64,000 bases of DNA from Klebsormidium nitens (GCA_000708835.1 DF237115.1:62001-126000), one strand, 5' to 3'; counted from the stretch's first letter, positions 6,501 through 53,400 are shown. A program made the numbers and translations. The notes: generated by a model from the sequence alone, not told the origin.

Positions 6501-8996
6501 GAATCTAAGGAGGACCTAGACTCCCGGCCAAACTTCGCGAGCCCCTTGGGCTAAAACCACGGGGGATCGACGGTCCGATGAAAAAAACAGACAATTTGGA
6601 ACCGTCGATTCGAAGGGTTATATTTCAGAGGGTCCCTTAAAAGCTGGCCCGGAATCCGGATCCTCCTTCCATCCGACTTTTGCAAGTACGTTCTTCTTCC
6701 ATCCGTTCTGGTCAGCTCTGTCTTTCTCAACCCTCTAAGGCTCCCCCTCGACAGTTCTTGCGGTCAGACGTGCTGCTCGGCCCATGCAAAAACGATGAGT
6801 CTCTGTGCGCTGCCGCTTTTTGTGGGTACCCATGGAGACCGGTTCCCACGTCGACGCTTGCGGTTCCTTCTGGAGGTCATACGTCACGGAGCGCTGGGCG
6901 CTTTTTCATGGTCGGTTTGCGGGCTCGTTAGAAGTTGATGATATGTCCAACGGCCAAAACTAAGCAGAGCGCAAGCGCGTAACATGATTACAGCCCGGGT
7001 ATTGGTCGAAGAGCCAGACTCAAGTCTGGTTACAAGGAACTACTATTACCCAATCCCTATGTGTGCGCGAAGCACTCATTTAGCTGACACGTGGCGCCCC
7101 GTGCAGGCATCGTCCCCGTGCAGAAGGTCCTGGCCTTCGACTCCTTCGCGGACGACCCGCCCTCGTCAGGATCAAAATTCCACTGTGCACGTGGCACTCA
7201 ATCTGACTGACACGTGGCGCCCCGTGCAGGCATCGTCCCCGTGAAGAAGGTCCTGGCCTTCGACTCACTCACCGACGACCCGCCCTCATCAGAATTTAAT
7301 CTTCTTGTACACGTGGCACTCAATTTGACTGAGACGTGGCGCCCCGTGCAGGCATCGTCCCCGTGAAGAAGGTCCTGGCGTTCGACTCCTTCACCGACGA
7401 CCCGCCGTCGTCCGGCCAGCCCCAACTCCCGGTTAAGATCGAGGCGACCGGAATCGTCGGTAACCCGTTCGACGCCGCTAACCCCGCCCAGCTCATCCTC
7501 ATCAACGACAACGATTTCGGCATCGCCGGGGACTTGACCCGGTTTACTCTTTTCAACGTCGCCGCGTCGACTTACCAGACGGTTTCCGACGCTCCCGCGC
7601 CCGCCCCGGCTTCGACGAATGCTACCGCTACCCCGACCCCCACACCGACTGCGACCCCGCTTAACTGCATCTCGAGCTTCGCCGCGGGGAGCACTTGCGA
7701 CCCCTTTGGGGCCACCCCTAACCAGGTGAGTGTGACGCTGACGCGTTCGCTCTGACGAAAGGGGACGTCAGAACAAGAAACGCGACGTAAGTGTGACTCG
7801 GAGACTTGAACACCTGTGCAGTGATCGGGCCGATTTGTTCTGCGTGTCTGTCTTTTCCGTCGACGTCGTTCCTCTCGAGCGAACGCTTTCGAGTTTTCGT
7901 CTTTTCTTCGGTCGTCGTCTCTCCGAAGCGAACCTTCTGCACGGTCACTAAACGATCGGTCCTGCCACTGTCGAGAGGCACCAACCTGCTAGTGCTTCAC
8001 CCTCTCTGTTTTTTTCCGTACATCGCACAGGTCTGCCACGCACAAGTTTGCACTAGCAGTCAATCGGTCTCCTAGACATCGACCTGACCGTCACCCTCGA
8101 CTCATCCCCTATCGCTGCCGCCTTCACAACGCTGCTTTAACATTGGTTTCTACACTATTCCCTTCTCTCTCTTTTCTTTTCAAAGCCGGCTCTTCCTACT
8201 CTAATCCCTCATCCGATCGTCCTCCTCTAATCCTTCCTCTCATCTCTCCTTCCGCCAGTGCTTCAACAACGCCGGTTCCTCCTACACCTGCTGCGCCGGC
8301 AGCTGCGGTTCCCCCCCCGGCGCCGTGGCCTACTGCACGGGGCAAGTCCCCGGGACCACCCCCGTCTGCGGCTCCACCCCTGCTCCGACCCCTGCCGGTA
8401 CCCCCGCCGGTACACCCGCCGGTACCCCTGCTGGTACCCCTGCCGGTACCCCTGCTGGTACCCCTGCTGGTACCCCTGCCGGTACACCCGCCGGTACCCC
8501 TGCTGGTACGCCTGCCGGTACCCCTGCCGCGACCACCGGCGCCCCGGGCCCGACCGCTTTTCCGGTTGGCGGCACGTGCGACGCCGGCAGCAGCCTGCCT
8601 AACCAGGTGGGCGATCGTTTGCTCGGGTGTGCGTTGGTTGATAAAGAACGGTTCCGCAGTCTGTTCTTTCGTTCCGTTTGCCTCTGCTTAGCGAGCGAAG
8701 TGCGCCTCCTTGCCTCTCAAGCTCGCTGGTTGAGTTTGAGTGGGTTGTTCTGCCCCGATCATAGAGTTACCGGTACTGATGAAACGACTCCTTCGATGTT
8801 TAGCTGGTGAGCACCAGAAGTCGTGTTCCCTTAGGTTGAGTGCAGCCGTCTCCTCCTTTTTGCCGCTGGAGGCCCTTCCATTTAAACCGAGTCTGTGCTT
8901 TACTTTCCGCAGTGCTTCAACGCCGACGGATCCAAGTACCTTTGCTGCCCTGCCGCGTGCGGAAGCCCCCCTGCCGCCCTGCCTTTCTGCGCTTAG
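514..8996 (+). CDS. Secreted phytase-like esterase (PF13449-type), paralog A, with C-terminal Pro/Thr linkers and two Cys-rich modules; first (signal-peptide) exon not found, probably upstream of the window
   Basis: Phase-consistent GT-AG exons: 514-592, 1233-1354, 2189-2401, 2867-3045, 3535-3640, 4183-4270, 5050-5219, 6208-6331, 7352-7725, 8259-8606, 8913-8996 (TAG). Family motifs LWTITDRGAN, DTESIV, FWVSEEYGPSI, RELNRGFENLA, ILQSPM and INDNDFG. Colinear exon by exon with paralog B. Confidence 0.85.
4785..5049 (+). repeat. Intronic ~27-28 bp minisatellite built from the branch-point/acceptor segment
   Basis: About ten degenerate units of (c)cggattccgctcgcacactgactt; the last unit ends in cgcag, the acceptor of exon 5050. 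Confidence 0.85.
5860..6207 (+). repeat. Two truncated copies (acceptor plus ~70 nt) of exon 6208, upstream of the intact exon
   Basis: cag|ATCGACCTCACTGGCGCAACC at 5875 and cag|ATTGACGTTACTGGCGCCACC at 6022 versus the intact cag|ATTGACCTCACTGGCGCGACC at 6208; both copies run into stop codons. Confidence 0.9.
7080..7351 (+). repeat. Two truncated copies of the start of exon 7352 (period 122-123 bp)
   Basis: gtggcgccccgtgcag|GCATCGTCCCCGTG occurs with exon-start positions 7107, 7230 and 7352. Confidence 0.9.
8388..8531 (+). repeat. Coding 12-bp minisatellite, (TPAG)11-TPAA linker
   Basis: acc cc(t/c) gc(c/t) ggt units read directly from the sequence. Confidence 0.95.
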
Positions 8997-11900
8997 GTGT
9001 TCGGGCCGAGGGTTTTGGGCCAATCGCGCCGAGACTTCCTATAGTAGGTAATATTCGAGTTGGTGATATTTTAGTTCGCGTGGTCACACTCCGAGTCCCA
9101 CGATCCCACTGTCAAGAGTCGTCTAAGCGAGGACATTCAGATGAGCTGGCAATAATGAGTGCGCGAACCGCGCGGTGGCATTTCGAGCTCCCCTGTCAGG
9201 AGTCCTTAGCGAAGAGAATAGTAATCGGAGTTGCTGTGACCGTAGAAGGGCTTCGTGGCGAGTTTCTCGAGTTGTCGTATTTATGTCAGCGTTGCCTCCG
9301 ATGAAAGTTGAGGAGAGAGCAGCCAAACGGTTTTGTTCCTTGAGTCAATTTTGAGAGTAGTGTCAGGGATCTTGAGTTGTCAATGAGCTCTTTAAATGCG
9401 TGGGTACGTTGATGACTGAACACCTGATTATGGAGTCAATGAACGCTACGTTTGAGTTATATTATTCAATTTTACACAAAACATTCATACTTATATCCAT
9501 TCAGGATTGGAACGGACCGTGTTCAATAACGCGGTCGCTTCTTTTCTTCGACAAGTTCCACAGAATGCTTCTTGCTCAAACCCGATTGTGGCGCGCAGTC
9601 TTATTGAATTGAACCCATGCTTGTGTGTACTACTTGCGATATTCAGATCTTAAAGCTTTCACCTTCGTACTTTCCAGTGACTAAAATAGAGCATTTTCGG
9701 AAGCTCGTGCAAACCCGGGTATTGTACAAGTATGGCCCCGCAGATAGTTACTATGTTGTGATCGGCCTGCTGCAGAAGAGTTTACCTTGACTATATAGAC
9801 CCGACAGTCAATCCAGAATGGAAAAAAGGGCCGCCGGGCTGCAATTGCTGTATGCCAATGATGCTTGTAATTGGTGATCGAAGTAAATTAGCAGTACGGC
9901 AAGCAAAGTACGACTACAATCCACAGATCTGGGTAGTTCCAGAGGCCGAGCCCCCTGGAAACTAGAAGGCTGATTCAGGAATAAAAGATGAGGCATGGTT
10001 CTGGTCTCAAATGAAGAGCTCGGTAGAGGACTAGCTACGAAGGTTCATGAATCATTCCTATATTTGAACAGAGCAGAGCAAAGAACAAAATGACAGGCCG
10101 TTTCCGTTTGTTACTCTGAGTGCCGATTAAGTGGCTGCCGGAGCATGATAAAGCCGCGATCATCCTGATCAATCTATTGATGTATACGTCACTTGCGCCC
10201 GGGTGGTGCACTTAGGGGATGAGCTCAGGTAACTGATGCCTTTGCAAGCCATGACGGTTGCAACTGTTGGAAAACGTGCAGCACTAGCTGGCCACTAGCT
10301 GATCATGATGCACGCCGGCCGTTGACAAATTAGCTCGATCCTTAGTCGAGTTTCGATCCGACGACCCCGGCCGGCCATGAGGCGCGGCCGCGCGGGGGCG
10401 GGGGGCGGCCGCCTGGACCGCGCGGCCGGAAACCGACGGAATGATCATGCAAGCGGAATCAGATCGACAGCCTACATAGTATGCCCGAGCCGCGAATCCC
10501 CAATATTAATACAAATGATTGAGACGGAATCTTTTTGGAATCCTTTACCGAAGAGCCTAGCTGCAGCCTGCATATGTGCAAGTCCGCCTGTGTTTGTGTG
10601 CATCAGCTGTAAATTCCTCCTAGAATTCCGCCCCGGCTTCTTGAATCTTGGTATACAGTCTCAGTCTTGGGTGAGATCCAATGGCAATACCATTTAAGTG
10701 ACCTTCTGACCAGTCTATCCAGTTGGGGACCAGTTGGTAGGCAGGACAAGGTAGGTAGGTTTGTATCGGGCCCTGGAGCCCAGTGCTGTGAAGGAGCTCT
10801 GATGTACCCATGTCGAATCAAGTTCCCATGCAGCACAGTTGTTCCGCGTGTCCGCTCACAAAACGCGAAGAGGGCAATAACCGCACGGCCTCTTGTTTTC
10901 TGCTCTACAAGGCGTCAGTGTTGAAAGGTGAGCGCACGCTCTCCTTCTCTCGAGTTGTGGCAGCTTTGCTTTGTTTTCCTGCTATGTTGGAGAACTAGAA
11001 AGTTGTCCTGGCTCTGGCTTTCAATCCTGCCTGGCCATCCACCCTTGATGAAAATCCGAAGATGGAGCATATAAGTGGCTTCCACGGGTCTGGAGGCACT
11101 CACTGACTGCACTCTACATTTGACTTTCTATGCTGTGCACTTTGTCTAGCTCTATGATCCAAAACCTTTGACTTGTAATAGTAAAAGCAGTATCCTCAGA
11201 AAGCTCCCAGAGCTCAATAATACGAGCTCAGAGTACTCTGCTGTTTTCTGCTTCATGTTCTATGATCTTGTCTTCAGTAAGATCTTTCAAGGCATGCTTA
11301 CTAGCACCACGTTACTCTTGTCTGCGGCGATGCAATGCACACCAACACTCGACATGAAGTAAGAGCAATGCTGTCTCCGGTTGGCCTTTGTGAGCTTTCA
11401 ATAGTAGGTTGCTGGCACCTCATTGCAAAGACTGTCAGGTCCTTGGAGGGGAGGGAAAGACAACTTGTTATCCTTATTTGAACTTCTTGCAGCATTTTGG
11501 GATATCAAGTCTGAAAACCGCATGCTGTATGAAAGATGCAGGAGGCGCCACATACTGTCAGCATATAACAGCATCTCAAGTGGACAATTCTGCATACCTC
11601 CAGACTTTCTTCTCAGTACCTTCATGACTGGGGTCCTTTCAGCAACTTTTGACTGGAATTCAGAAACAACACAAATTCTAGCTTTCATCTTGTGGTTCAG
11701 TAAGACAGACCTGGCGCCGCAAGGCCCCAACTTTGTTTATCACAAGACTATACCACTGACAGGCCGACCAGTCACAGGACTGTCCCATCTGCATGCCCTC
11801 AACATTGTGCGATGAGTCAAATCGGGAGTCTTCTTGTGCCTGAAGGACATTGTGCACACACACACGAGCCCGGTATAAATGGGTCGGCAACGCCAACAGT

Positions 11901-12177
11901 CCGAAGATATAAGAGTCCGGTCTCGGTCAGTGGCAGTCAGGCTGCGCTAAGCCGCCCTTTGAGACTCTGCCTTCTCAACAGAAACTGAATGCCACCACTC
12001 TCAACTCAGACAGCCAAGCTGAATCGCCTTGCGTCGCCTTTGCCCTGCAGATTTACTAAGCCTGGTTCCCTTAGGTTCTCACATTCTCCCACCATTGCCC
12101 ACCATTGCTCAAGCCCCTAGCTCAGGGAGAAGTCAAAAAGCTCAGCAGCAGCTCTTCTCTGTCCTGCAGGATTTTCA

Positions 12178-15100
12178 ATGGCGGTCTCTAGGGCCCTCGT
12201 GTCCGTTCTTCTCCTGGCCAGTTGCGCCCTTGCCGCCGCCGCTCCCGCCTCAGTCATCTCTCAGAAGACCTATTTCCAGCTTATCAAGAGGGTGTTCTTT
12301 GGAAACACGACATCCGGCCCTTGCTCAGTGAACGGCTCCAACTACCTTGACATTGACCTTGGCCCTGGCAGCGGGGCATTTGTCATCGGTGAGCGCCGAT
12401 AACTTTTGAGATGGCAGGCAATATTGGGTGTGTCTACTCTCCATGAACAAGCAAAAGCTTTTTGTAAGATTCAGTCCTGTCTCTTGAGAAGCGTTTGGTC
12501 TCCATCCTCACTGTTACTTTTCAAAGGGAGGAACGTTCCAAGCATCGTTGTTGGTATTTCGAAGCTGGCCGGTCTCGAAGTGCAAGGGTCTTCTGAAAAT
12601 GTGTTAAAACGGTTTGGAAAACAGCGGGGTCGTTGGGCCTACTCTCAACATATGAGATAGCATTCTATTCAGAAGAATGAGAATTGCCACCGTATGAGGA
12701 CCAACCACATGTTTTGACCCTTCCTGGGGCCAGATATTAGCAGAACACTCGCTTGGCCGAGATAGGCTTGCTTTCGCAACAAATGCTCATCGCTCAGAGT
12801 ATCCCTGCTTAGTCCTCTTGTATCCACGTTCGAGTTGAGGAACTTGTGAACGACCACGGTTTAGTTTTCAACACCTGTCAAGGTGGCCAGCTAAAATCTT
12901 AGTATCCCTGTTGCAGGAGATAACCTGTGGACAATCACCGACCGCGGTGCCAACGTGGATTGCCAGGGTGGCAATGCCCCAGGAGGTGCGGCCGGGACCA
13001 CACTATCCAAAGCTTGCCAGGCCACAGGATGCCCCAAAGGGGGAACCAAAGTCTACCCCATCCCCGACTTCTCACCCACGATCCAGCGCAAGAAGCTGCC
13101 AGATGTAAGTTTGGGGTCCTATAAGGTCATCCAAAAGCCCTGGAGAAGAGAGGCCGAAGGGGTGGTCAGATCAATTAGCCGGCATTGTTTTTGTTGCAAT
13201 CAGCGACTACCGACCTTGAACTGATATTGGCTGGGGTTTTGGTCGTGTCTATAAACTTACCTTAGCTTCGTTTCCTGGATTCGAAATCCTTTAAGTGCCA
13301 ACCCCACGAGCAAAGATTGATGGTGCAAAGACAGAATCGAACCACGTTCATCCCATTGAAGGGATCTGATTCTGCTCGCTTACCTTCTTCACGTCTCTTT
13401 TCTTTGCCCCGGTCTTCCAGGGAACCCCATCATTCGACGACGACCTAAGCAGCAAACAGACTGACTTTTTGCTGCGAAAGAGGTTGAACACCGCTCCTCT
13501 TTCCCCTTCTCCTAGAAAGAAATGTAGAGGTCATAGGGTGAAGTCCTGCTTATTCCCTTCTTCCTTGTCCCCTTAGGTCTTCACCGGACCCCATCACTTA
13601 TCAAGGATCCAAACAACGAGAGACGTCAGACCAAGCTGGGCACTGAGGTCATTGCAACGCTCGTCTTCCCCGGACCCCTACAAACAACCGAAGAGATCCT
13701 CGATGATCTCCCGCTTATACCCCTCTCCCTTTTTCCTCCAGGTCTTCACCGGAACCCCGACTCCAGTCGAGACCATCATCATGAAGAAGGGCAACGGGCA
13801 GGGAATCTCGGGTCTACCCAACTTCCGCCAGGCCGACAATAGTTCGGGGAGCATCTACTCGAGCCTTCTCACGGGAGAAGACGGCTACGGCCCCGACTTT
13901 GCGCTGCTGGCCCCTAACCCCTTTGGGCAGGACACAGAGGGGATCGTTGTGGTGAGAATCGCAACCCACGCTTCTCTCCCTTCTCTGCGTCAAAATCTGT
14001 TAAAATCTCAGCTTTTCCGGCTTGTTTCCGCTGATAATCTGCCTGGGATTCTGATCTTGTTTATGTCGGCATCGAGTCCATAGTAAGATTCTTACCAATG
14101 GTCGGTCACAAGTGAAGGAATGATTCCTGTACGATGACAATGATTCTCCTTGTAAACCTTTTCTGCTGACTCCTACTCCTCTCTCGAGACCCTTCTTCAA
14201 TGTGTCCGCCTTTCCGAACCTTCTCTCCGGACTCTGGTTATAACTTTTGACGCAGATAGAAACGACCTATGGTGGAGAGAATTTTGAGACTGCTGCTAGC
14301 TGATGCGGTAAACGCTCCCCCGACCGATTGCTGCGTTTGAGAAGGCTGCTCTCACCAGTGCTCATCTTACTTTGCCAAACGTTGGCCAGCCCAAATTCCG
14401 CTGGTGCTGCCAGGAAGTGATCTCCTCACAAAGCACTCATCTCTTTGTTTCGCAGACGTCAGCCAATGCTGACGGCACCGGCGCAACCTTCTGGATTTCG
14501 GAAGAGTACGGCCCTAGCGTCTCCAAGGTCGGCTCTGATGGCACCGTGCTCGCGCGCCACGTGCCAGCGGGTGTCGTGTACGAAACCTTCGTCGCCCGGG
14601 CTAACCCGATTCTGGCGGTCGACCCAACCAACGGGTAAGTTTTGTTTTGGTTTCTGTGACCGGCTCTCAGGTGGTCTAGATTGGGTGGTTGCTAATGGTC
14701 TTGCTCACGGCTAGCAAAGGACGCTGCAAAGTGAATGAAACTTTCGTTGCCCGCGCTAAGTCGATTCTGGCGGTCGATCCCACCAACGGGTAAGTTCTGG
14801 TTCGGTTTCGCTAACCCGTTTAAGTCGGGTGGCTGGTGTCGTTCTTGCTGACGTCCTGTGGTGACCACAAGGTAGACCTCGTTAGATCGCACGCGACTTA
14901 TTTTGGCAAATATCCAGCTCGGTGAAGAGAAGCTGATCAAGAAAGTTACTTATGTTAGCATCGGGCTTTTTGGACTTGATTGCCGATCGTTGCGGAGTTG
15001 CTGAGAGTGGGTTACCTGCTCTTTCGCGAAGCTCCCTGCCATCGATGAACTGCTCTCTTAGACAAGCGATCGGAAAAGGAACCTTGCTTGAGCGACGTGT

Positions 15101-18100
15101 TACGTTCGTCTCAAGGAATTTTACGGACTCTCTTCGTACAGGTACCCAATCTATCCCACTTTCCCGTCTATCCTGGTCAAGCGCGAGCTGAACCGTGGGT
15201 TTGAGAACCTGGCCTACTTCGGAAAGTACTTGTACGCCATTCTGCAGGTCAGACACTTTATCGCGTTGCTCAGCTTGTACGGCTTTCGTGCTTCTTTGCA
15301 GTGGAGGAGCGAAAGCGCTCTCCTTTTCTCTCCTTCTGTCCCTTTGCAGCTTCGAGTTTTCACCTTATTCGTATCCAGATTTGCCCCGCTTCTGCAGCTA
15401 AAGATTCTGCGAAGGCTTTTTGACAATTTCCTGATTTGGGTCCTTGAGCTCAAAGCTGTGCGGTTCTGCTTCAGTACAGACGTGCTCTTTAAAAGAGAAG
15501 CTGCGAACTGAGAATCGGCTAGACACTCCCGTTCCATTTTAGGCTTCCGTTTTCCTTTCGTCTTCTTAAGCGCTCTCTTCGAATATCAAAAGCGCTTTTG
15601 AAGGCCATGAGCCTTTCTTTTACTATTCAAATTAACAGGGGATTTGAACTCAGTTCAAGTGAACGGTGGTCGTCACAGTATCTTAGATGCTGTACAGTCG
15701 TTGGATGCTGAGCCGTTTCTGATTTGTCCAGCTGGGCTCCCGGCCCCTAACTTTTAACATCCACATTCGGGCTATTGCACCTAGTGCTTTACCTTGATTC
15801 TTTCCACCCTTATGGAGCATCTTCTGAAAGCTGGATTGCACGCCTTCTTTTATAACCCATCCGCTTTTGCTGGCCGGGCTTAGCCTTCCGTATGCTGGTC
15901 AGTCCGTATTACTGTTAAATTTATTCTCTTTAGGAGTCTTTTTTCCTGACTTTACCCCCCGGGTTTACTTTTACTTTCACTTTTACTACTGCTCTTCAGC
16001 TTTTACTTGCGTAGAAGGGTCATTCGAAAAGACAAGTGGACACAGCTTTTTTAATCCTCTTTTCATACAGAGCCCCATGGCCAACCCCGGCGAGACCATC
16101 CAGGCGATCTCGAGAGTCATCCGCCTCTTCAAGCTGGAACTCAATGACGCCTTCCCAGGTAAGTGACACGTGTCACTCATGACGTCACCGTTGTGGACGT
16201 CATCGCCCTCTTCGCAATAAAAGTGTTTGTATATTGACCCTGCCCAGTAATGCTTTCGGTATGGTATCTGCGCAGCGATTTTCGAGTGCATCGTAAATTT
16301 GTGCCTAAAGAATCATCAGCTCCGGATGATAAGATGCACGTTCAGAGAGCTTGCTTTCCTGGACGCTTGGTAAATCTCACATACTCATGAAACTTTGGAC
16401 AGAACACTGTGTGTTGGGGTCCTGACTGTGACGCGCGAGGAGAGCTCAAGAAGTGAAGCTATCAGTAAGCTCCACCTGACATCAGAAACTCAACCTTGAA
16501 AACTACCTGCCGCGTACCCTAACTCCCAAATGCAACCCCACCCCTCCTAGTGCGAGGATACCTTGTTAGTCTCTTTGCTTACATTATCTTTCTTGAGTTA
16601 AGTCAGTGTAGAGACGGCCCAAACGAAAACGAAAAAGAAAGGAAAAGTTGAGATGTTGTGTGCTCTTTCCCGCAGGCGGTGCCCAGGTGGTGGGGGAATA
16701 CGTGTATTTCGCAGAGGACTTCTTGACGTTCCCCCAAGACCAGCCCAAGGCGGACCAGTCCAACATCAAGCTGGGGGACGCGGTCGCGATCGCGGAGGAC
16801 GTCATCCTCGTGGACGAACACGTCACCCTCCAGATCAAGCTCTTCAGGGTGAGCCGTTCGATAGACACGCGTCTCTGATCTAGATGTATGTGCTTGGTGG
16901 TCAGGGTAGTTGATGCAACGCTTGCGGATCGAATTTATTTATTCGAGTAAGTATCCATTGTGACGATTACGGGGACTCGTTCCGCATACTTTCTTGCGCA
17001 GGTGCTGAGCCGTAGTGCTCTCTTATCAGGAACTCCTGATACCAAAAGTGCACCTGTGGGGTAAACCGTAGGGCTCTTGATTCTTCAGGAATCTTCAGCC
17101 CGCCTAAAGAAATTTATCCGCTGACCATGTTTACAATTTTGTTTAGATTGAGCTGGCTGGTGACCAACTTCTTGGGATCCAAGTGGGACGACGTTTTGCA
17201 GTCCCCCACCCTCAAGGAACCGAGTCGTCAAACTCAGAAAGTCTTTACCCCCCATATTCAAAACCCTAGATTGTGTGTAAATAAACCCTTCGTGCAGATT
17301 GAGCTGGCTGGTGCGACCAACATTCTGGGCTCCAAGTGGGACGACGTTCTGCAGTCCCCCACCCCTCGAGCAGCTCAACGTGGCCGGTTCTGCTGGCAGC
17401 AGCGAGACCCTCGCATCCCAAGGTCGGTCCTCGCTCCTTCGTAGCGTTCGTCTTTGTTTGACACTGAGCACGTAGAAAACCCGTTGAGGCGTTCTGACCA
17501 ATTGCAGTTTCCTTGTCGATTATGGAAGCCCGGAACGAGTTGTTTGTGCGCCAGATTTTCTGACCAGTTCGTATTCTCGTTCCTTCCGCAACTTCCCGAG
17601 CTGCCTTTTGCCAAATCTCCACGAATCTGCTTCAGGGGTTGGGTACCCAGTTCGACATTATTTCGTCAAAACGGAGACAATTACAATCGTTTTATTGAAG
17701 GTCTCCGACACGTTGAAACTTTTGATTGACAAAGAAATGCCATTACGCCTGATCGTATGTCCGACTCGGCGACGTCATCGAAGACCGTAGCATCGTTCTG
17801 GGATTTTGTAAAAGGTGCGCACAAAAGATCTAAGTATTAGTAGAAAAGCATCGTTGACTCATAGACAAGAGTGGCGAATTTAATTACGGCAGCCGCTTCT
17901 TCGCCCACACATGGCCCCCGTCAAGAAGAGGAAGAGCTTCTGCAGACCGGCCCTTCTGTATTGCAAAACCGTAGAGAAGCTTGAGACCGGGCAAGCCGAA
18001 AGTAACGAGTAGACAATGAAGAAGGATGCGACCGACCGTGTGTTAGACTCGGGTTTTGCAGCCGTCACCAATCCTGTCTACTGTACCGACCAGGGACAAT

Positions 18101-20029
18101 ATAAACGTGGGAGAAGACTTGAAAGAAGGAAAGGAACAAACAACTTTGCGATCGGTAGTCCGACCCTGTTACAAACCACCCAGGGTCTTCGAGACTCTCT
18201 TTGTCAAGGACACTCTGCGTGAAGAGGGAAAAGATAGATTTGGGGCCAGTCAACAAGGGTACACACTTACCGGTTGATTCTTCCCCAGGCATCACCCCCG
18301 TGAAGAAGACCCTGGCCTTCGACTCCCTCACCGACCTCCCCGCGGGGGGGCCCCAGCTCCCGTCCAAGGTCGAGTCGCTTGCCATTTACGGGGATCCCTC
18401 CAGCACCGCCAACCCAGCGCGAATCATCCTCGACAATGATAACGATTTCGGCATCTCTGGTGCGACGACTTTCTTCACCGAAATCGCGGTCGATCCGACA
18501 GCGGTCTTTGGATTGGCTGCCACGCCACCTGCTCCCGCCCCGGCTAACTCGACCGCGACACCGACCCCGACTTCGACTTCGCTGAACTGCATCCAGAGCT
18601 TCCCGGCGGGGGGGACCTGTGACTACACCTCTGCTACCCCCAATCAGGTGACTTTTGTCCCCCTTTACAGTAACGGCATTCCAGAACGTGTCCTGGACTG
18701 CCGGAGACTTCCTGAGAGTCCTTCCTGCCTGCGTTGTGATTGCACGAAGCAGTTGATTCATAAACAGTGACCCGTGGCAACTCGATGCTTCGAGTGGCCG
18801 CATCCCTCCCTCCCAAATCGACCGCTGCGCTGCTTCCGCCATCCTGCCCAAATGCGCTCGCCTCATGATTTAGAACAGCACACGAGATCGCAACAAGACT
18901 ACCGATCTGATTCTGCGCGACTAAGCCTCATGGATTGCTTGCTCGTTGTTGTTCGGGTCTTCAAAAGTATTTTAGAATTGGTCACCGTTGCTGCGAAGTC
19001 ATTGAAAAGGCCTTCGACTCTTTCTCTGTCGCTTTTCTCCCCCTTCCCAGTGCTTCAACGGCAACGGTTCCTCCTACACCTGCTGCGCCGGCGCCTGCGG
19101 TGGGGCCGGCTCCCCCCCGGGCGCCGTGGCCTACTGCTCGGGGCAAGTCCCCGGGACTACCCCCGTCTGCGGCTCCACCCCCGCCCCGACCCCTGCCGGT
19201 ACCCCTGCCGGTACCCCCGCCGCTACCCCCGCCGGTACCCCTGCAGGTTCCCCCGCCGGTACCCCTGCCGGTACCCCCGCCAGTACCCCTGCCGCGATCA
19301 CCGGTGCCCCGGGCCCGACTGCCTTCCCGGTTGGCGGCACGTGCAACGCCGGCAGCAGCCTGCCGAACCAAGGTACGTGTAACGTGACTGAGGCTCGAAT
19401 CTGCCACGTGGCAGCTGGTTCAAATCGCTGAAGCTGGTCAACACCCCGGGCTCGAGCGGTCGTCTTTTTCCTTTTGATGCTCAAAAATGCTCTCGACCCA
19501 CGTGCCGCATCACGAGCCCCTGGAAAATGAGTCGATCGGGCTCTTGGTAGCAGCCTGCCTAACCAGGTGGGTTATCCGAGTCGTTGGTTGAGCACCCTTG
19601 TTGACCAATGGGTCAACAAAGAGAACGATTGGGCGATCTGTTCTTCAATTCCGTTCCGCCTGCTCTGCGGGAAGGAAGGAGTGCGCCTCCTTACCCCTTA
19701 CAGCTGCTAGTTGAAGTTGTCATTAATGACTGGTTGTGCCCCGAAGAATTGCCACTGGTGATGAGACGACCTTTTGGATGTTTAGCTCGTGAACAGCACC
19801 GGACGTCGTTTCCCCTCCAAACGTGCACTCGTCTCCTCCTATTCTAGAAGCTAGTTGTATCGTTGAAAATCTTCTAATATGATCCTTTTATTCCAAGCCT
19901 CTTAAACAAGTCTTTTAGTCTGAGTTTACCCTTTCTTTTCCTCAGTGCTTCAACGCTGACGGATCCAAGTACACTTGCTGCCCTGGCGCGTGCGGCACTC
20001 CCCCTGCTGCCCTGCCTTTCTGCGCTTAG
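12178..20029 (+). CDS. Secreted phytase-like esterase (PF13449-type), paralog B, with signal peptide and Cys-module tail; last splice junction ambiguous
   Basis: Signal peptide MAVSRALVSVLLLASCALA. Exons 12178-12388, 12917-13104, 13742-13951, 14456-14634, 15142-15247, 16071-16158, 16676-16848, 17298-17422, 18289-18647, 19051-(19340 or 19372), 19946-20029. Same motifs as paralog A (TDRGAN, SEEYGPS, NRGFENLA, DNDNDFG). The last intron and 3' UTR are also homologous to paralog A. Confidence 0.85.
13550..13593 (+). repeat. Short echo of the acceptor and start of exon 13742
   Basis: ccttag|gtcttcaccggacccc at 13577 versus ctccag|gtcttcaccggaacccc at 13742. Confidence 0.65.
14737..14810 (+). repeat. 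Donor-side echo of the end of exon 14456-14634
   Basis: gaaactttcgttgcccgcgctaagtcgattctggcggtcgatcccaccaacgg|gtaagt repeats the exon end and its donor 155 bp downstream. Confidence 0.9.
17135..17297 (+). repeat. Frameshifted echo of the start of exon 17298
   Basis: tttag|attgagctggctggtgaccaac... at 17147 carries a 2-bp deletion relative to the real exon; the following spacer is homologous to the spacer in paralog A. Confidence 0.9.
19189..19296 (+). repeat. Coding 12-bp repeat, nine TPAG-type units
   Basis: TPAG TPAG TPAA TPAG TPAG SPAG TPAG TPAS TPAA. Confidence 0.95.
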
Positions 20030-46010: not shown

Positions 46011-46225
46011 GTCACGGGTTGATTTGTTTTGTTGGTCAATAAGTTATGGCAGTGTACAAGGCAAAAGACTCCTATGCACAGAACGGTGTCGGCCCCGGGT
46101 TGTTGGGGCATTGCTCGGTCACGGGTTGATTTGTTGTGTTGTTAAATAACGTATGCCAGTGTACGGGGCAAAGAGATTATTAAGCGCAAAACGGTGTCGG
46201 CCCCGGGTTGTTGGGGCACTGCCCG
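46011..46225 (-). repeat. 107-bp tandem duplication of the terminal exon end, stop codon and 3' UTR
   Basis: Units 46011-46117 and 46118-46225; the echo encodes ...PNNPGPTPFCA*. Confidence 0.85.
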
Positions 46226-49200
46226 GGGCAACAAATGGACGCAGTGCCGGGGGCGTTGAAGCACTGCACAGGAGAAAGCCGTCGAAAAGCGTCACAACAG
46301 TTCTTTAAATGGATGACAACGCCTACGGATCCTCTCGGTGACCCACAAGAAGAAGACGTGCAAGATTCTGAAACACCTGAAAGAATCTTGTACGACTGGT
46401 CTCGAGCTCGCAGCAAAAGTAGCAGATTCTTTCATTCTGAAGCCTCAGACGGAGCAACGGCGACTGTCAAACAACGGATCGGTGATCAAAGTATTGGTAA
46501 GGACTCCCCGCATACCTGAGTGACTTTCCTTCTGTATCCTCAATCGTTTTCAACCCCAAAGAACTACCATTTCCAAGCAAAACCCTTGTGCAATGCAAGA
46601 GGAACAAGATTGCAATGGTGGCCAGACCGAAGTGCAGGGCGAACTTGCAGCGAGGCCTATAAACTCAGAATCCAGCTCACAACAACGAACACAAAAGTAT
46701 TCCGTTTGTTACAAAGAACATCGGTCTTGGGCATTCTTACCTGGTTTGGCAGGTTCGAGGTCGGGTTGCACGGAGGGCTTCCCCCGGTCGTAGAACCAGA
46801 GGCACTGGTGGGAGAGGGATTGCCCGGAGATCCGGTGGCCGGGGAAGGTCCACCGCAGACGGCGCTGGCTCCGGGGTTTCCGGGGCATTGCCCCGGGCAG
46901 CAGATGGACTGTGAACCGGCCGCGTTGAAGCACTGCGGAAACGCAGAAAGTGGGCAGTCAAGGATCCTACGCTTTTGGGGAGTGAGAATGAACTTGTATC
47001 AGCGTACATGGATGACGGAAGTTATACTTGGAACGAGTTTCTTGGGCATTGTCCCGCGCAGCAAATGGACTGGGAACCAGCCGCGTTGAAGCACTGCGGA
47101 AAACGGAGACAACAAGTGGTCAAGAATCGTTTTCTGCTCGAATATGTGACGGAATCTCTACAAGACGTATCAGCGTACATGGATGACGGAAACTGGGCAA
47201 TCGGATTGAATCTCGAGGGCACTGTCCGGGCAGCAGATGGACTGTGAACCAAACGCGTTAAAGCACTGCAAAAGGTTTACAGCGAGTGGGCGAAGTTGAG
47301 TATCTGTAAAGTTCTATTGCCTATAAGGCCATGCCCGGAGGACGGGTGAGGTCGGCTTGGTGGTTAGGCGGGTTCGGGTGCGGAGTGGTTTATAATGTTG
47401 ATTGGAGGTTTTTGTTACGTTGTTGTTTTGGTACTGCCTTCAAGTTTTAGATCGTCATAAGGTTCGAACTTTACGGTTATGAGGAAGCGAGTTGTCGAAA
47501 TTTGAGCACATAGTGTACACATGCGATGTCCTTCACTGTAAAAGAGAAAAAGCAATCGTGCAACGGCCATCAAAGCTGTGCTTAGGAAGGAATAAGACGG
47601 CAATCAAATGTGCAATCAGAACATGGCAAAGCGTTAAAAGACTTTCGGCAAGGAGAAGACTAAGCCCTCTTATGTTGATCAGTCAAGCGGTGGACTCCCG
47701 ACGTTGCACCTGGTTCGGCAGGTTGGACATTGGATCGCACGGAGGGCTTCCCCCGGTCGTAGAACCAGAGGCACTGGTGGGAGAGGGATTGCCCGGAGAT
47801 CCGGTGGCCGGGGAAGGACCACCGCAGACAGCGGTGGCTCCGGGGTTTCCGGGGCATTGCCCCGGGCAGCAAATGGACTGAGAACCGGCCGCGTTGAAGC
47901 ACTGCAGAGAACGGAGACAACGAGTGGTCAAGAATCGTTCCTGGCTGGGAAATGTGACCGAACCTGTGCAAGACGTATCAGCGTACATGGATGACGGAAA
48001 ATGGGCAGTCGAAATTTCCGTGGGCATTGTCCCGGGCAGCAGATGGACTGAGAACCGGTCGCGTTGAAGCACTGCGAAAGTGTGAGAGCGAATAGGCGAA
48101 ATATAGTACCTATAAGGTCCTGATATGGATAAGGCCATCCCCGGAGGACGGGTGAGGCTGGCTCGGTACGGTTAGGTGAGTTCGGGTGCGGAGAGGTTCA
48201 TTATGTTGCCTAGATTTTTGTTAGGCTGTTGCACCGGATACTTCCTTCAAGCTTTAGATCCTCATAAGTGTCAAACGTCCCGGTTATGAGGAAGCGAGGT
48301 GTCGACAGTTGACCCCATAGTATACACATGCGATGTCTCTTCGCTGTAAGAGAAGCAAACTTGCCGCGGCCATCGAAGCTCTGCTTAAAAAGGAACACGA
48401 GGGCAAATCTGCAATTGAACTCTGGCTAGTCGGAGAACAACTTTCGGCAAGGTGAAATGAAGCCCTTTTTTTATGTTGATCAGTCAAGCGGTGAGCTCCC
48501 ATTCTTTTACCTGGTTCGGCAGGTTGGAGGTCGGGTCGCACGGGGGGCTTCCCCCGGTGGTGGAACCAGAGGCACTGGTGGGAGAGGGATTGCCCGGGGA
48601 TCCGGTGGCCGGGGAAAGCCCACCGCAAACAGCGGTGGCTCCGGGGTTTCCGGGGCACTGTCCCGGGCAGCAAATGGACTGTGAACCGGCCGCATTGAAG
48701 CACTGCGGAAACAGAGAACGTGGGGTCAAGAACTGTTCATTTTTGGCAAGCGCCCTATGCAAGCGTGTCAGCAAACATGGATGACGGGCACTCAAAATGA
48801 GTTGCGAATGTGGTAAATGCTTATGCGCAAATCAGCTACGTTTCACTGGGGGAACTTGGAAGTAAGCATCGGGATAGTGAGATGAAACAACAGAGACACT
48901 TTGGGCCATTCTCAGGGTGCGGTGGAGCCCTTTTTCGGACCACGGCTGAAAGCAAAGGATACTGCGCGTTTCTATACGTTTACTTGACCAAAAAGTCGAG
49001 CCGCTCCTCGTTTGCATTGGCGAGCTTACTGCACTTCGAATCAAAGACGTGCGCACACCGTTTCAAATGGACCTAGCAGCAACAGATTCGGTCAATACAT
49101 GGCGCTCCGTGCTGCGGACGCTGAGCCCACGGATCCTTACCTTTACAAGGCGGCAAGCGAAGCATTCGCCTGCCTGATCCGACTCGCTGCTCGTCGAATG

Positions 49201-49620
49201 CCGAGCCACACGTCTCACTTTTGAAGGGTTTTGCCGTTTGTGTGCGAGCAGGAACGTTATTTCGAAAATGCGTTACGGAAGGTGCTCACTTGGTTGGGCG
49301 CGGCTGACGTCAGGTCGCACTGCGCGCACGTTGGCACAGGTGGCAAAGAATCTGGACGCCTGATCCGACGCACTGCACTAGAATCCGTCGACTGCCAACT
49401 TCCATCTTTGAATGTTTGTGCCTTTCTGTGCAAGCAGCGGCGTCTTTCATAAAAGATACATGAAGAAGGTGCTTACCTGGTTAGGCGTGGCTGACGTCGG
49501 GTCGCACTGCGCGAACGTCGGGGCAGGCGCGAGTGTGGGGCCGCACACCGGGTTGGGCCCGGGGTTCTGAGGGCACTGCCCGGGGCAGCACAGGGACGCT
49601 GTCCCGGGCGCGTTGAAGCA
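46180..49620 (-). CDS. Array of phase-0 Cys-module exons with no evident start of its own; probable long 3' isoform of the NAGPA-like gene
   Basis: Exons 49620-49477 (48 aa), 48702-48511, 47901-47710 and 46932-46741 (64 aa each, near-identical), and terminal 46263-46180 (CFNAPGTASICCPGQCPNNPGPTPFCA*). All begin cag|TGC TT and the internal ones end AAC CAG|gt. Confidence 0.75.
46741..48702 (-). repeat. Recent tandem triplication of a module exon with its flanking intron (spacing 801 and 969 bp)
   Basis: Three 192-nt exons are nearly identical, and intron segments ~47280-47700 and ~48080-48500 align (e.g. aaggccat-cccggaggacgggtgagg). Truncated half-module echoes start at 48071, 47265 and 47093. 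Confidence 0.9.
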
Positions 49621-50490
49621 CTGCAAAGCTCGGGAAAGGCGTCGGGCTGCTGATCACCGGCATGAAGAATTGACATTCCAAAGATATTCCAAAATGATGT
49701 CGCTGAAACGTTATCCGTGTTCTTGAAAGGATGAGCAGCAAGTGCTGGATTTGGGACTCGCAGCCCTGTTCTTGTTCCTGAGTCTACTTTCCTGGACCAG
49801 GTGAGCAGACCTAAGGCACCTTAGTGAGCTTGCGTCGTTTGAAGGTTTTTGCGATCGGACAAAGTTGGACGCCTTAGCCGGTTTGACTTGAGCAGAATTT
49901 CAGCAATCGAGCTGTCCCACGATTGAACAACCTGGTCATCGGAAGGCCCAGATTCCAAGCAGATGCATAGGAAGACTCGAAGAAATGCAGGCAATCTACG
50001 GGTGAAGCAGGCCCGGTTGCATGCAGTTTGGTGACGGTGACTATCAAACGAGGATCGTACATGGGTCTATGGCGTGCTGTGACAGTCTCTTCTTCGCTCC
50101 GTACGGTTCATGCATAACTTAGACACGGTTCTTGCATAACTTAGACAACGGGAGGCTGCTTAATGTGGGCGGTCCGAAGCTGCTCTAATCTACCGTTTAC
50201 ACGAGAGGTTAGCTTATCTCAAAACAAGAGCTACCGAATTGCGCGGTCATCAACCGTTCTATTCACACTCAAACTACTGCCTTTGCCGGTCCTTTCTTGG
50301 ATCCAAACGGACCTGAAACTCCAAGCCACGGTTAACTTTTCGTGCTGCCCAGTCCTGTACAGTCCTGCTCGCACCCCCATACACACTATACATCTTTAAA
50401 AAGGCTGTAAATCGATCCAAACGGACTTCGTGGGGGTCCTAAGCCGGCTAACTATCAAAATCGTGACCTCGAGCAACAGCAGCCAGGGGA

Positions 50491-53400
50491 TCAGCACTGG
50501 GGGTTGGCCCCCGGGGTCTGGGGGCACAGCCCAGGGCAGCACAGAGACGCAGTACCCGCAGCGTTAAAGCACTGCACGACGACAGGACACTGTCACTCGT
50601 CTTTTGATCTGCTTGCTTTTCCTTGACGGACTGCGTTTTTGAACGATATGCCTCATTGACACAACTTCCGTACCTCGTCTAAAACACAGTCCTCAAGACG
50701 GTTGACACAACTTCCGTCCGTATTTCAAATACAGTCCTCCAAACGGTTGGGCTGTCAGTGCGGTAAACGCGACTGAATTCGCAACCAGATAGAGATACTC
50801 TCAGTATAATCGACGGCCTGGAAACCTTACGCACCTGGTTGGGATTGCCAGAAGTGGGGTCGCAAGGCGGGGGCGTTCCTGCGGCGACTCCGGGCGCTGA
50901 CGTCTTCGCAGGAGCGGTCGCCGTAGTTCCCGAAGGCACCGGACCAGCGGTGGTCGGGGCGACGGTCGGGGCGGCGACCACTGGGCCGGTCGGGGCCCCG
51001 GTGGTAGAGCCGGGAGTGGTAACGGTAGTGGGGCTGGAAGCGGAGACGGTATTGGGGCTTGGAGTGGTCGGGGGGACAGCCGGGCCGCACACGGCGAGGG
51101 GCCCGGGCCTCAAGGGGCAGGCCCCGGGGCAGCAGATGGACAGTGTGCCAGCGGCATTGAAGCACTGCGGGACAAAGGAAGGGTTTGCGAAACGGGTTAG
51201 GGAGACTCGGCGAGCCTGTTGAGAGCGTTGGGTGATAGACTGGAAAAGGAAGCGAGGGCATATAAAAGCGTGAGTCAAGGAGAGAAGAAAGCGGGCGGAG
51301 GAATGGTATGGTATGAAAGTGGTAAGAGACGAGGAAAGACGGCATCAAGGAAGGGGGTACGAGAACCGATAAAAACAACCAGAAGAGCCACAAATTTTCT
51401 CTCTGCGTCGGCCATGTGAGTTGAGCGTTGGAGATGAACTGTAGGCAGAGGCTTACGGTTCCCAAAGAAGAACACAAGGCATACAAGCGCGCTGACGTCT
51501 TGCTATAAGAAAGGGCTGATATTTGCCGCGAGGGGTGTGGAGCTAGGGCCAGAAAGACACGACCAACTCGAAGGTTGAGGTGGAGCATGCACACGATACA
51601 GAAAGCGTCTCGGCATTTTTCCGCCCAATAATCTTGAGCGCCTCCGTCGAAACGTTCGGTGGGTCACTGACTGCCTTTTCATAATCTGCAACTTTAAGTA
51701 GAATCCCAAATCAAAGGAGCTGACCCCAAATCTCGACCAACAACAAACCTCTGATCACGCAATAAGGGGATGCACTTAGCTAGCTCCAAGAAAAGGTCGG
51801 CAGCCTCTTCGTTACAAGTTTTGGCGCGAGTTATCGAGCGCGGTTGAGGAAGTCAACCGACCTGGTTAGGATTCTGCGAGGTCGGGTCGCAGGGCTGCGA
51901 AGGGGCGATCTTGAAGCGGTCCTTGAAGCAGACGATCGACGTGACGGCGCGCTCCTGGCGGAAGCTGAACGTCTGGCCGTTCACAGTCGCGTTAAGACTG
52001 CAAACCGCAAAGACCAGGATTTATGCTTTTGGATATTTAGGACTGAGGTTTCTAGAAACCACAGTGGGAGAAAGCCATCGCCTTTCAAAGCTACTCAGTT
52101 TGTGAAGACCTGATGGCCTGCTTCTTGCGGAGCAAGGATTGCGTTGAGTCTGAAACGCCTGGCCGTTGACGGCGTGGTGAGACTGCAAAAGCGCAGTGGC
52201 GAAACCTTAGGCTTGCAGAATTGAGGATTGGGCACTTTAAAATAGGCTGTTGAGATTCTACTCCAGCGAAGGCACCTCTAGTGGAAGCCCTGATGGCGGA
52301 AGCCCTAATGGCCTGCTTCGGAAGGAAAGCGAACGCTTGGCCATTCAAGGTTGCGTTGAGATTGCGACCCACAGGGTCCAGACCTACAGACTTCCAGTAG
52401 GAGTTTAAATTGAAAGCTTTCTGGTTCTCAGACCTTGAAGGTCCCTCCTTGACGAAGACCTGATGGCGTGCTTCTGTCAAAAATGAAAACGCCGAGCCCA
52501 AGGAAGTTTTTCGGGGTTTGTACAGCAACTCCAAACTCAGGTGTAACATTCCCGGGGCGGCAAATAAAAGATTGCGCCTGCAAATAGTAAGTGTCCTGAC
52601 TCCCAGCTTCTACAAAGTTTTGGGGCTCAGATTACGAAAGCGATATCACAATCGTTTCCTTTGCAAGGACGACTCAACCGTTAACGTGCTGTTACAAAGG
52701 CGAAGCTTGGGCAGCTAACGGAATCAAGGGCTCTAAAGCTTACTTTGAACTCTTCTCAACGTCCTGAGAGAAAGCAAGTTTGAGCGGCTAGGCCAACAAG
52801 CACGTTTGGAGCGAAGGAAGGAAAAGCACTTCAATTTGAAAGGCAAGCGCAAGTGGTTCTCACATGTCTGACGGGTAGCTCGACAAAATTCCGTCGGTGA
52901 CAAAGGCGCTGCTACCGCCCCCGTCCAGGTTGATTGCGTTCACGGCGCCATACGAGATGAGCAGGTCCGCGACGTCGTATAGGCTCGCGCCGCGCACGTT
53001 TGACTGGCCGTCCAGCTGGAGCAGGAGGATCTCGCCCGCGGCGTTGTGCCCGATAGCCGTGCGGGCTGACACAATGCTGGCAAAGTCCTGGGAAAAGGAG
53101 GATGGTGTCAAAGCTGGCCCACCGGAGTGAGCACAGTGGGTAGTCGTTGGAGTTGAGCTCCGGTGCCAATCTGTGGCGGTTAAAAAGGACGAAGATAGAA
53201 ACACAATGCTGGCAAAGACCTGGGAAAAGGAGGATGGTGTCAAACCTGGCCAACCGGAAGGGTGAACACTGAGGGTGAACATTGGAGCCGAGTGAGAGCT
53301 CTGAGCTGAGCTCCGCTACGATACCTGTGGCCGTAAAAAAGGACGAAGACAAGAACACCATGCTGGCAAAGACCTAGGAAAGAGGACCGTGTCAAAGCTG

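What the first reader, a model, noticed from the sequence alone, without database searches (positions are those of the whole stretch)
7660..51997. Unrecognised six-cysteine module shared by two unrelated secreted enzyme families
Seen in sequence: a ~36-aa motif C-x9-C-x9-CC-x3-C-x9-C with an invariant PNQ|CFN core occurs about ten times. It appears twice at the C-terminus of each phytase-like paralog (e.g. CDAGSSLPNQ|CFNADGSKYLCCPAACGSPPAALPFC), twice after the NAGPA-like domain (CDPTSQNPNQ|CFNAAGTLSICCPGACPLRPGPLAVC) and four more times in the 46-49.6 kb array. Every copy is split by a phase-0 intron at the same Q|C position. The terminal exons of the phytase-like genes and of the array are both 84 nt and end in PFCA*. 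Established: small disulfide-rich domains on Pro/Thr linkers are the classic layout of carbohydrate-binding modules, and the spacing differs from hevein (C-x8-C-x4-CC-x5-C) and WAP. Inference: this is a new exon-shuffled wall- or matrix-anchoring module grafted onto secreted hydrolases.
Basis: partly seen in the sequence, partly recalled or inferred. Interest (0 to 1): 0.92.

Follow-up and report, generated by a model that had tools for sequence, protein, structure and literature searches.

The report
Klebsormidium-only six-cysteine add-on module
A small, previously undescribed three-disulfide protein module, so far found only in the terrestrial green alga Klebsormidium, is attached by proline/threonine linkers to many unrelated secreted enzymes and most likely holds them in the cell wall, though what it binds has not been tested.

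Summary
The window is Klebsormidium nitens scaffold DF237115.1. It carries 11 spliceable copies of a ~36-aa module, C-x9-C-x9-CC-x3-C-x9-C with a PNQ|CFN core: 2+2 on two phytase-like paralogs and 2 or 6 on a NAGPA-like gene. Three decayed relics also exist. Dinucleotide shuffles give 0 second halves against 12 observed.

RNA contigs confirm eight PNQ|CFN GT-AG junctions. They also show that the 46-49.6 kb "array" is not a separate gene. It is an alternative 3' tail of the NAGPA-like gene, giving 2 or 6 modules. Array exons have dN/dS of about 0.06-0.13.

The module matches no Pfam family or solved-structure sequence. AlphaFold2 folds it confidently (pLDDT 90.8, a beta-hairpin core). Foldseek and VIA-align find no structural relative except other K. 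nitens proteins.

A profile search of 1.84 billion representative proteins gave 21 hits. All named ones are Klebsormidium. Partner domains include an NPP phosphodiesterase, PhoD, alpha-carbonic anhydrase, dirigent, LDLa repeats and GH16.

The Q|C intron is shared by four genes but is absent or placed elsewhere in other family members.

Verdict: a real, new, lineage-restricted accessory module of secreted proteins. A CBM-like wall-retention role is plausible but untested. The scan also noted the alternative tail on this same window (s1-285481).

The parts
7696..8336 (+). Phytase-like gene A, module 1. First half 7696-7725, 533-nt phase-0 intron, second half 8259-8336. An extra flanking Cys pair lies at about 7663 and about 8370.
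   Evidence: RNA joint 7725>8259 in run X8
8577..8996 (+). Phytase-like gene A, module 2. First half 8577-8606, 306-nt intron, 84-nt terminal exon 8913-8996 ending in PFCA and TAG.
   Evidence: RNA joint 8606>8913
2864..7725 (+). Phytase-like gene A, catalytic-domain exons: about 2213-2403, about 2864-3048, 3534-3640, 4183-4270, 5050-5219, 6208-6331 and 7352-7725. The 5' end lies before or near the window start.
   Evidence: RNA joints; open spliced frame; exon 2852-3049 hits PF13449 at E 2.3e-4; blocks conserved with the paralog
12178..20029 (+). Phytase-like paralog B. The signal-peptide exon starts at 12178. Module 1 is 18618-18647 plus 19051-19137, with a 3-aa insertion. Module 2 is 19342-19371 plus 19946-20023, with the stop at 20027-20029. 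The module 2 donor is non-canonical at Q|C.
   Evidence: no RNA test done
50491..57995 (-). NAGPA-like gene, short isoform (annotated 469 aa). Signal peptide at 57995. NAGPA domain exon at 52860-53282. Module 1 is 51891-51862 plus 51164-51087. Module 2 is 50864-50835 plus 50571-50494. Stop TGA at 50493-50491.
   Evidence: RNA joints 51862>51164 and 50835>50571
46180..49620 (-). Alternative long 3' tail of the NAGPA-like gene, annotated separately as KFL_001660180 (P0001). Exons are 49620-49477, 48702-48511, 47901-47710, 46932-46741 and 46263-46180. They complete module 2 differently and add four more modules, giving six in all.
   Evidence: RNA joints 50835>49620, 49477>48702, 47710>46932 and 46741>46263 in 3-4 runs; phases; dN/dS 0.06-0.13; tandem exon-plus-intron duplication at 82% over 917 nt
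47037..49340 (-). Decayed partial module copies inside the array introns. Second-half relics lie at 48079-48015, 47269-47217 and 47109-47037. A first-half duplicate lies in 49340-49172.
   Evidence: RNA depth is low there

Best explanation
This is a new, lineage-restricted protein domain family. It is a 33-39 residue (36 in nearly all window copies), six-cysteine (presumably three-disulfide) mini-domain built round a beta-hairpin. The consensus is C-[DN]-P-x-S-x2-P-N-Q-C-[FY]-N-x2-G-x4-C-C-x3-C-x9-C. It is attached through Pro/Thr/Ser-rich linkers, which are probably O-glycosylated, to the C-terminus (occasionally the N-terminus) of many unrelated secreted Klebsormidium proteins. In this window it follows two phytase-like paralogs (two modules each) and one NAGPA-like phosphodiester glycosidase. 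That gene's transcripts end either in a 2-module tail or, through an alternative acceptor 950 nt further on, in a 6-module tail. The most likely function (inferred, not shown) is a non-catalytic binding and retention module, analogous to a carbohydrate-binding module. It would tether exo-enzymes to the cell wall or extracellular matrix, with avidity set by copy number. Copy number grew by tandem duplication of symmetric phase-0 exon-plus-intron units. The module reached new genes as genomic DNA, carrying its internal Q|C intron.
For: Shown. The module is real and non-random. The halves are joined in RNA, and the alternative 2- and 6-module tails share exon 51164-50835. Purifying selection acts on the duplicated exons: dS 0.19-0.31 against dN 0.018-0.025. 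Both modules are kept in an ortholog at 66% identity. AlphaFold2 gives a confident compact fold, pLDDT 90.8. No Pfam or PDB family matches. Signal peptides are present. Linkers are 81-93% P/T/S/A/G. The module is promiscuous. Partner domains are NAGPA, Phytase-like, NPP PF01663 and nine LDLa repeats, PhoD, alpha-carbonic anhydrase PF00194 and dirigent PF03018, and GH16 PF00722 next to two N-terminal modules on an environmental contig. It is usually at the extreme C-terminus, ending 0-2 residues after the last Cys. The family is restricted to Klebsormidium nitens, K. subtile and unnamed contigs: 21 hits among 1.84e9 representatives. The same intron occurs in four unrelated genes. Inferred: the binding role. 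It rests on the architectural analogy with CBM1 and hevein-type modules, and on an invariant aromatic after Cys2 plus a frequent second aromatic two residues before the CC pair, which fall on the two hairpin strands.
Against: No binding data of any kind exist. Most partner domains are not carbohydrate-active enzymes. The second aromatic is missing in the NAGPA-type copies (SQSICC, TASLCC), so a CBM1-like aromatic platform is not conserved. Structure searches are weak for 41-residue models, so the lack of a match does not prove a new fold (note). The taxonomic restriction is bounded by the sensitivity of a 32-column profile built from one genome.
Confidence: 0.5

Rival explanations
1. The module is a very divergent member of an already known disulfide-rich family, such as the hevein/CBM18-like chitin binders including PF11410 antifungal peptides, granulin half-modules, or inhibitor-cystine-knot peptides. 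On this view it is not a new family.
For: The cysteine order C-C-CC-C-C is that of the hevein core and of many knottins (established knowledge). Two of 26 members give a sub-threshold PF11410 hit, best 18.2 bits at E 0.0024 against a 22-bit cut-off. Granulin appears as a weak neighbour in three searches: cosine 0.63, TM 0.42, and AFDB rank 14 at E 9.
Against: Loop lengths differ: 9/9/0/3/9 against hevein's 8/4/0/5/6. The predicted hairpin lies between Cys2 and the CC pair, not after the CC pair as in hevein (hevein topology is from memory). The A2 profile finds no PDB chain below E 0.1, and no hevein, antifungal-peptide, granulin or knottin chain is among its six matches at E<=10. Foldseek pdb, Swiss-Prot and VIA-wide give nothing with TM>=0.5 or Z>=2. 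All atlas feature scores are below 0.9.
Confidence: 0.15
2. The module is a structural or cross-linking knob rather than a glycan binder. It would be a stable, protease-resistant cap that spaces, oligomerises or links secreted proteins into the hydroxyproline-rich glycoprotein network of the wall.
For: The partner proteins are heterogeneous and include phosphoesterases, carbonic anhydrase, dirigent and LDLa repeats. Surface residues other than Cys, Gly, Asn and one aromatic are poorly conserved. Linkers are HRGP-like. One member has five cysteines, leaving a free thiol (P0017).
Against: Nothing distinguishes this from the binding model with the present data. Multiplying to six copies by alternative splicing fits avidity better than capping.
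Confidence: 0.2
3. The multi-module tails are precursors of released bioactive mini-proteins, such as antimicrobial or protease-inhibitor peptides. This would parallel granulins or plant hevein-like peptide polyproteins.
For: The nearest language-model neighbours are hirudin, conotoxin-like peptides, spider toxins, granulin, hevein and cyclotides, all below the 0.9 reliability line. The six-module tail looks like a polyprotein.
Against: The linkers carry no dibasic or other obvious processing sites and are Pro/Thr/Ser/Gly/Ala only. Most proteins carry just one or two modules behind a large enzyme.
Confidence: 0.1
4. The repeats are non-functional duplication debris or annotation artefacts.
For: Three decayed partial copies sit in the array introns. 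The public annotation splits the locus into two genes, one with an implausible N-terminus.
Against: Spliced RNA is seen in four runs from four studies. dN/dS is 0.06-0.13. Orthologous modules are conserved in other Klebsormidium species.
Confidence: 0.02

Closest known systems
CBM1 (fungal cellulose-binding domain, Pfam PF00734)
   Same: It is about 36 residues, disulfide-stabilised and has a small beta structure. It sits at the extreme N- or C-terminus of secreted enzymes behind O-glycosylated Pro/Thr/Ser linkers, and it is promiscuous across enzyme families.
   Different: CBM1 has four cysteines and a QCGG...YSQC signature with three aromatics in a flat face. This module has six cysteines in C-C-CC-C-C order and a PNQCFN core, with only one invariant aromatic. 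There was no Pfam hit.
Hevein domain / CBM18 and hevein-like antifungal peptides (PF00187, PF11410)
   Same: They share the C-C-CC-C-C cysteine order in the core, a Gly-rich turn, a small size and use as an accessory module of secreted plant proteins. PF11410 gives the only sequence hint, and it is sub-threshold.
   Different: Hevein has eight cysteines, different loop lengths and the CCS-x2-G-x-CG aromatic sugar-binding motif. The hairpin position differs in the model. There is no profile hit to PDB hevein or EAFP chains.
Plant granulin domain at the C-terminus of RD21-type cysteine proteases (PF00396)
   Same: It is a cysteine-rich stack of beta-hairpins placed after a proline-rich linker at the C-terminus of a secreted or vacuolar hydrolase. 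It is a weak neighbour by structure and by language-model features.
   Different: Granulin has 12 cysteines with four CC pairs. TM is only 0.42 and there is no Pfam hit.
Inhibitor cystine knot (knottin) mini-proteins
   Same: They have six cysteines in C-C-CC-C-C order and a comparable size.
   Different: Loops 1 and 2 are nine residues each, longer than is typical. The connectivity is unknown. The predicted hairpin lies between Cys2 and Cys3-4 rather than between Cys5 and Cys6. Here the unit is a module of large enzymes, not a free peptide.

Membership tests
CBM1 (PF00734) | Match to the family profile, with four conserved cysteines and the QCGG / Y-x2-QC signature | tested here: not met
   hmmscan against Pfam at E<=10 gives no CBM_1 hit for 4 window modules or for 26 family members. 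The module has six cysteines and a different signature.
Hevein / CBM18 (PF00187) and PF11410 | Profile match above the gathering score, with eight (or ten) cysteines and the CCS-x2-G-x-CG motif | tested here: not met
   There is no PF00187 hit. PF11410 matches only 2 of 26 members, best 18.2 bits against a 22-bit cut-off. The A2 profile finds no hevein or EAFP chain in the PDB.
Knottin / inhibitor cystine knot | Disulfide connectivity I-IV, II-V, III-VI with the third bond threading the ring | not testable with these tools
   The cysteine order is compatible.
Granulin (PF00396) | Twelve cysteines with four CC pairs, plus a profile match | tested here: not met
   There is no Pfam hit. The best structural TM is 0.42.
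Carbohydrate-binding module (CAZy sense) | Discretely folded, contiguous, non-catalytic sequence | tested here: met
   The AlphaFold2 model has pLDDT 90.8 over 41 residues. The module is flanked by low-complexity linkers.
Carbohydrate-binding module (CAZy sense) | Found within carbohydrate-active enzymes | tested here: inconclusive
   Partner domains include a NAGPA phosphodiester glycosidase and a GH16 on contig L005. Most partner domains are phosphoesterases or other secreted proteins.
Carbohydrate-binding module (CAZy sense) | Demonstrated carbohydrate-binding activity | not testable with these tools
   This needs binding assays.

The most novel reading that the evidence does not exclude
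The module is a Klebsormidium innovation that retains phosphate-scavenging exo-enzymes in the wall of a soil-crust alga. Phytase-like, NAGPA phosphodiester glycosidase, NPP and PhoD enzymes make up five of the roughly a dozen partner proteins whose domains could be named. On this reading its valency (2 versus 6 copies) is regulated by alternative 3' splicing of half-module exons. That would be a new fold with a new ligand, linked to life on land.
Probability: 0.15. Interest if true: 0.65.

Novelty: new member of a known kind. Interest (0 to 1): 0.42.

Why it matters
Klebsormidium is a key model for how streptophyte algae adapted to land, and its secretome and wall biology are poorly annotated. 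A confidently folding, unannotated module that recurs on at least a dozen secreted proteins would give a new Pfam/CAZy-type family. It would also correct a public gene model, because KFL_001660180 is a tail of its neighbour. It offers a simple handle (module-GFP) to ask how this alga keeps exo-enzymes, notably phosphoesterases, at its surface. The switch between 2 and 6 modules by alternative splicing is a tidy natural test of avidity. The impact is limited by the narrow taxonomic range and by the absence of any functional data.

Tried and rejected
- Pfam on typed modules, on 26 family members and on whole partner proteins found no family for the module.
- A PDB sequence profile search gave only chance hits above E 0.1: ICAM-3, Smoothened and IgM.
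- Foldseek against pdb and afdb_swissprot, VIA-align wide and ESM-atlas structure search gave nothing with TM>=0.5 or Z>=2. AFDB clusters returned only K. nitens proteins.
- Language-model look-alikes were generic disulfide-rich peptides, all below 0.9.
- The search for homologous proteins with a 110-aa exon found nothing because of its length window. With the P0003 tail it found 5 proteins. With the P0018 modules it found only itself.
- The search for related loci on viral contigs and on prokaryotic genomes found no relatives.
- An exact degenerate DNA pattern for CFNA-G-CCPG-C in JGI metagenome contigs gave 0 matches.
- Literature searches for a described Klebsormidium cysteine-rich module or CBM found nothing relevant.
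- Rejected: the array as an independent gene.
- Rejected: the Q|C intron as universal in the family.
- Rejected: P0008, a bacterial repeat protein, as a family member.
- Not done: the spliced window proteins could not be submitted as references. Family-wide work therefore used database proteins P0001-P0027 and single exons.


Full report
**Source and genes**

The reverse complement of locus L001 (NCBI GCA_000708835.1, DF237115.1) is identical to window 36180-60393. The window is therefore Klebsormidium nitens DF237115.1:62001-126000. GC content is 52%.

**Check of the observation**

Six-frame regex scans find ten first halves, C[DN]xxSxxPNQ, plus one relic copy. In 100 dinucleotide-preserving shuffles the same patterns occur 0.24 and 0.0 times on average, against 11 and 12 observed.

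Spliced together, the halves give 11 modules of 36 residues (39 in one copy) with the spacing C-x9-C-x9-CC-x3-C-x9-C.

Logan contigs of four RNA runs from four studies carry GT-AG joints exactly at the Q|C boundary for eight junctions. These are 7725>8259 and 8606>8913 in phytase-like gene A. In the minus-strand gene they are 51862>51164, 50835>50571, 50835>49620, 49477>48702, 47710>46932 and 46741>46263.

All internal module exons are multiples of three and phase 0-0. The three terminal exons are 84 nt and end in PFCA plus a stop.

Three points could not be confirmed.
- Junction 48511>47901 was not resolved, because it lies between near-identical exons.
- The last module of paralog B lacks a canonical donor at Q|C. 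The sequence reads CAA|GGTACG, so the GT is one base late. A duplicated exon end with CAG|GT lies 195 nt downstream, at 19546-19566.

**Gene structure**

That gene is KFL_001660180 (P0001, 294 aa), and its N-terminus is translated from the neighbour's 3' region.

The RNA contigs instead show two alternative continuations from the same exon, 51164-50835. One goes to the 78-nt terminal exon at 50571 (short tail, 2 modules, stop after ANPQC). The other goes to 49620 and on through the array (long tail, 6 modules). Both occur in all four runs, with contig depths that vary between runs. The 25-nt shared sides are what a k=31 unitig graph gives at such a branch.

The gene starts at 57995 with a classical signal peptide and carries a NAGPA domain (PF09992, E 1e-19).

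Phytase-like gene A was reconstructed from RNA joints into an open frame. One exon hits PF13449 'Phytase-like' at E 2.3e-4, below threshold on its own. Its paralog B starts with a signal peptide at 12178.

Within the array, units of exon plus intron were duplicated in tandem (82% identity over 917 nt). Exons are far better kept than introns: 92-94% against about 51-63% identity. dS is 0.19-0.31 and dN is 0.018-0.025, which indicates purifying selection.

**Family, range and partner domains**

A 32-column profile of the second halves (A1) was searched against 1.84 billion representative proteins. It gave only 21 hits at E<=0.001. One, P0008, is an unrelated bacterial repeat protein.

All named hits are K. 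nitens proteins. One further member is from K. subtile. The rest come from unnamed JGI, Logan and ENA contigs, some clearly orthologous to the window genes.

Partner domains with support:

| Partner domain | Protein or locus | Evidence |
|---|---|---|
| NPP phosphodiesterase, PF01663 | P0013 | |
| Nine LDLa repeats | P0017 | |
| Alpha-carbonic anhydrase, PF00194 | P0027 | |
| Dirigent, PF03018 | P0026 | |
| 'Alkaline phosphatase D' | A0A1Y1HZF2, module at 657-697 | |
| GH16, PF00722 | ORF following two N-terminal modules on contig L005 | |

Several partner proteins have no known domain (P0003, P0020 and the 1501-aa P0010). Weak, sub-threshold hints to PLA2G12 and PAN were also seen.

The module is nearly always at the extreme C-terminus, ending 0-2 residues after the last cysteine. 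An ortholog pair at 66% identity keeps both modules intact.

No relatives were found in viral contigs, in prokaryotic genomes or, for an exact degenerate pattern, in JGI metagenome contigs.

**Intron positions**

I mapped 16 further modules onto their genes (27 with the window's 11).
- The Q|C phase-0 intron is present in both modules of P0003 and in module 1 of P0025.
- An intron just before Cys5 is shared by P0020 module 1 and P0025 module 2.
- P0013 has an intron after CYSA.
- Ten modules have no intron: three in P0010, two in P0016, one in P0017, two in P0018, P0020 module 2 and P0025 module 3.

The split is therefore not a property of the family. It marks a set of copies in four unrelated genes, which fits spread as intron-containing genomic DNA. 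Within the window, modules group by gene and by position: A1 with B1, A2 with B2, and the NAGPA copies together. Identity between the two gene families is 58-73% at the nucleotide level. The phytase-like and NAGPA acquisitions are therefore old, not a recent local transfer.

**Is it a known domain?**

- Pfam gives nothing for four typed window modules at E<=10. For 26 family members the only match is a sub-threshold PF11410 (antifungal peptide) hit in 2 of them, best 18.2 bits against a 22-bit cut-off.
- A profile of the full module (A2, 26 sequences) finds no PDB chain below E 0.1.
- AlphaFold2 on A2 gives a confident model: mean pLDDT 90.8, with 34 of 41 residues at 90 or above. It has one beta-hairpin, with strands at the PNQC-F segment and at the x-x-CC segment.
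- Foldseek against the PDB and Swiss-Prot models, VIA-align against 48,161 chains, and the ESM-atlas structure search all give nothing with TM>=0.5 or Z>=2.
- AFDB clusters return only other K. nitens proteins, at TM 0.81-0.93.
- Language-model neighbours are generic disulfide-rich peptides (hirudin, conotoxin-like, granulin, hevein, cyclotide), all below the reliability line.
- Two literature searches found no description of the module.

These structure searches have little power for a 41-residue model. I therefore claim a new sequence family, not a proven new fold.

**Mechanism**

Shown:
- The module folds independently in prediction and is under selection.
- It sits on secreted proteins behind linkers that are 81-93% Pro/Thr/Ser/Ala/Gly.
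- It has been combined with many unrelated catalytic domains.
- Its copy number in one gene is switched between two and six by alternative splicing.

Inferred:
- It is a non-catalytic binding or retention module in the manner of CBM1 or hevein-type modules.
- Multivalency raises avidity for the wall or matrix.

The invariant aromatic after Cys2, and a frequent second aromatic before the CC pair, would lie on the two hairpin strands. The second aromatic is absent from the NAGPA-type copies, so the ligand-binding surface is not obvious.

The over-representation of phosphoesterases (phytase-like x2, NAGPA, NPP, PhoD) is suggestive of wall retention of phosphate-scavenging enzymes. It rests on a small, non-exhaustive sample.

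**Verdict**

It is a new member of the known kind 'small disulfide-rich accessory modules of secreted enzymes', restricted so far to Klebsormidium. Interest is moderate. The same window's alternative-tail reading was noted before by this scan (s1-285481) and is borne out by the RNA data here.

Noticed in passing
window 19342-19567 (+): In paralog B the exon end ...GSSLPNQ is duplicated 195 nt downstream, at 19546-19566. The upstream copy reads CAA|GGTACGT, so its GT is one base out of phase. The downstream copy keeps CAG|GTGGGT but lies behind an in-frame stop. Three outcomes are possible: the last module of B is broken, a 35-nt micro-exon (19532-19566) restores the frame and lengthens loop 1 by 12 residues, or the inserted segment is removed as a separate intron. 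The duplicated flanks resemble a target-site duplication.
   Followed up: partly
window 5870-6423 and 7061-7412 (+): Introns of phytase-like gene A hold near-copies of the adjoining exon junctions. There are two upstream copies of exon 6208-6331 (5870-5991 and 6017-6138), two upstream copies of the acceptor and start of exon 7352 (7061-7167 and 7184-7290), and a downstream echo of the 6331 donor (6371-6423). Paralog B has the same blocks. The scan has noted similar 'junction echoes' in other windows of this genome.
   Followed up: partly
window ~7663 and ~8370 (+); same in paralog B: Module 1 of both phytase-like paralogs is bracketed by an extra cysteine on each side (LNC-x9-C...module...C-x10-C). 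This suggests a fourth disulfide clamping its termini. The related-species fragment P0005 keeps the downstream one.
   Followed up: no
window 46180-50393 (-), public gene KFL_001660180 / GAQ83883.1: The annotated 294-aa 'hypothetical protein' has no signal peptide, and its N-terminus is read from the 3' region of the neighbouring NAGPA-like gene. RNA joints indicate it is that gene's alternative tail, so the public model should be merged.
   Followed up: yes
window 3400-9350 (+): Phytase-like gene A is covered by spliced contigs at depth of about 100-130 in run X8 (2015 study). It has no contigs in X1 or X4 and only a trace in X11, whereas the NAGPA-like gene is present in all four runs. Expression may be condition-specific, but contig depth is a poor measure.
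   Followed up: no
P0017 (K. nitens KFL_000370120), residues 664-703: A protein with nine LDL-receptor class A repeats ends in a single module. Its first cysteine is replaced by proline, which leaves five cysteines.
   Followed up: no
window 47872 (-strand exon 47901-47710): Contigs of X1 and X8 read G where the genome has A. This most likely reflects contigs of the near-identical exon 48702-48511 laid on this copy rather than editing.
   Followed up: no
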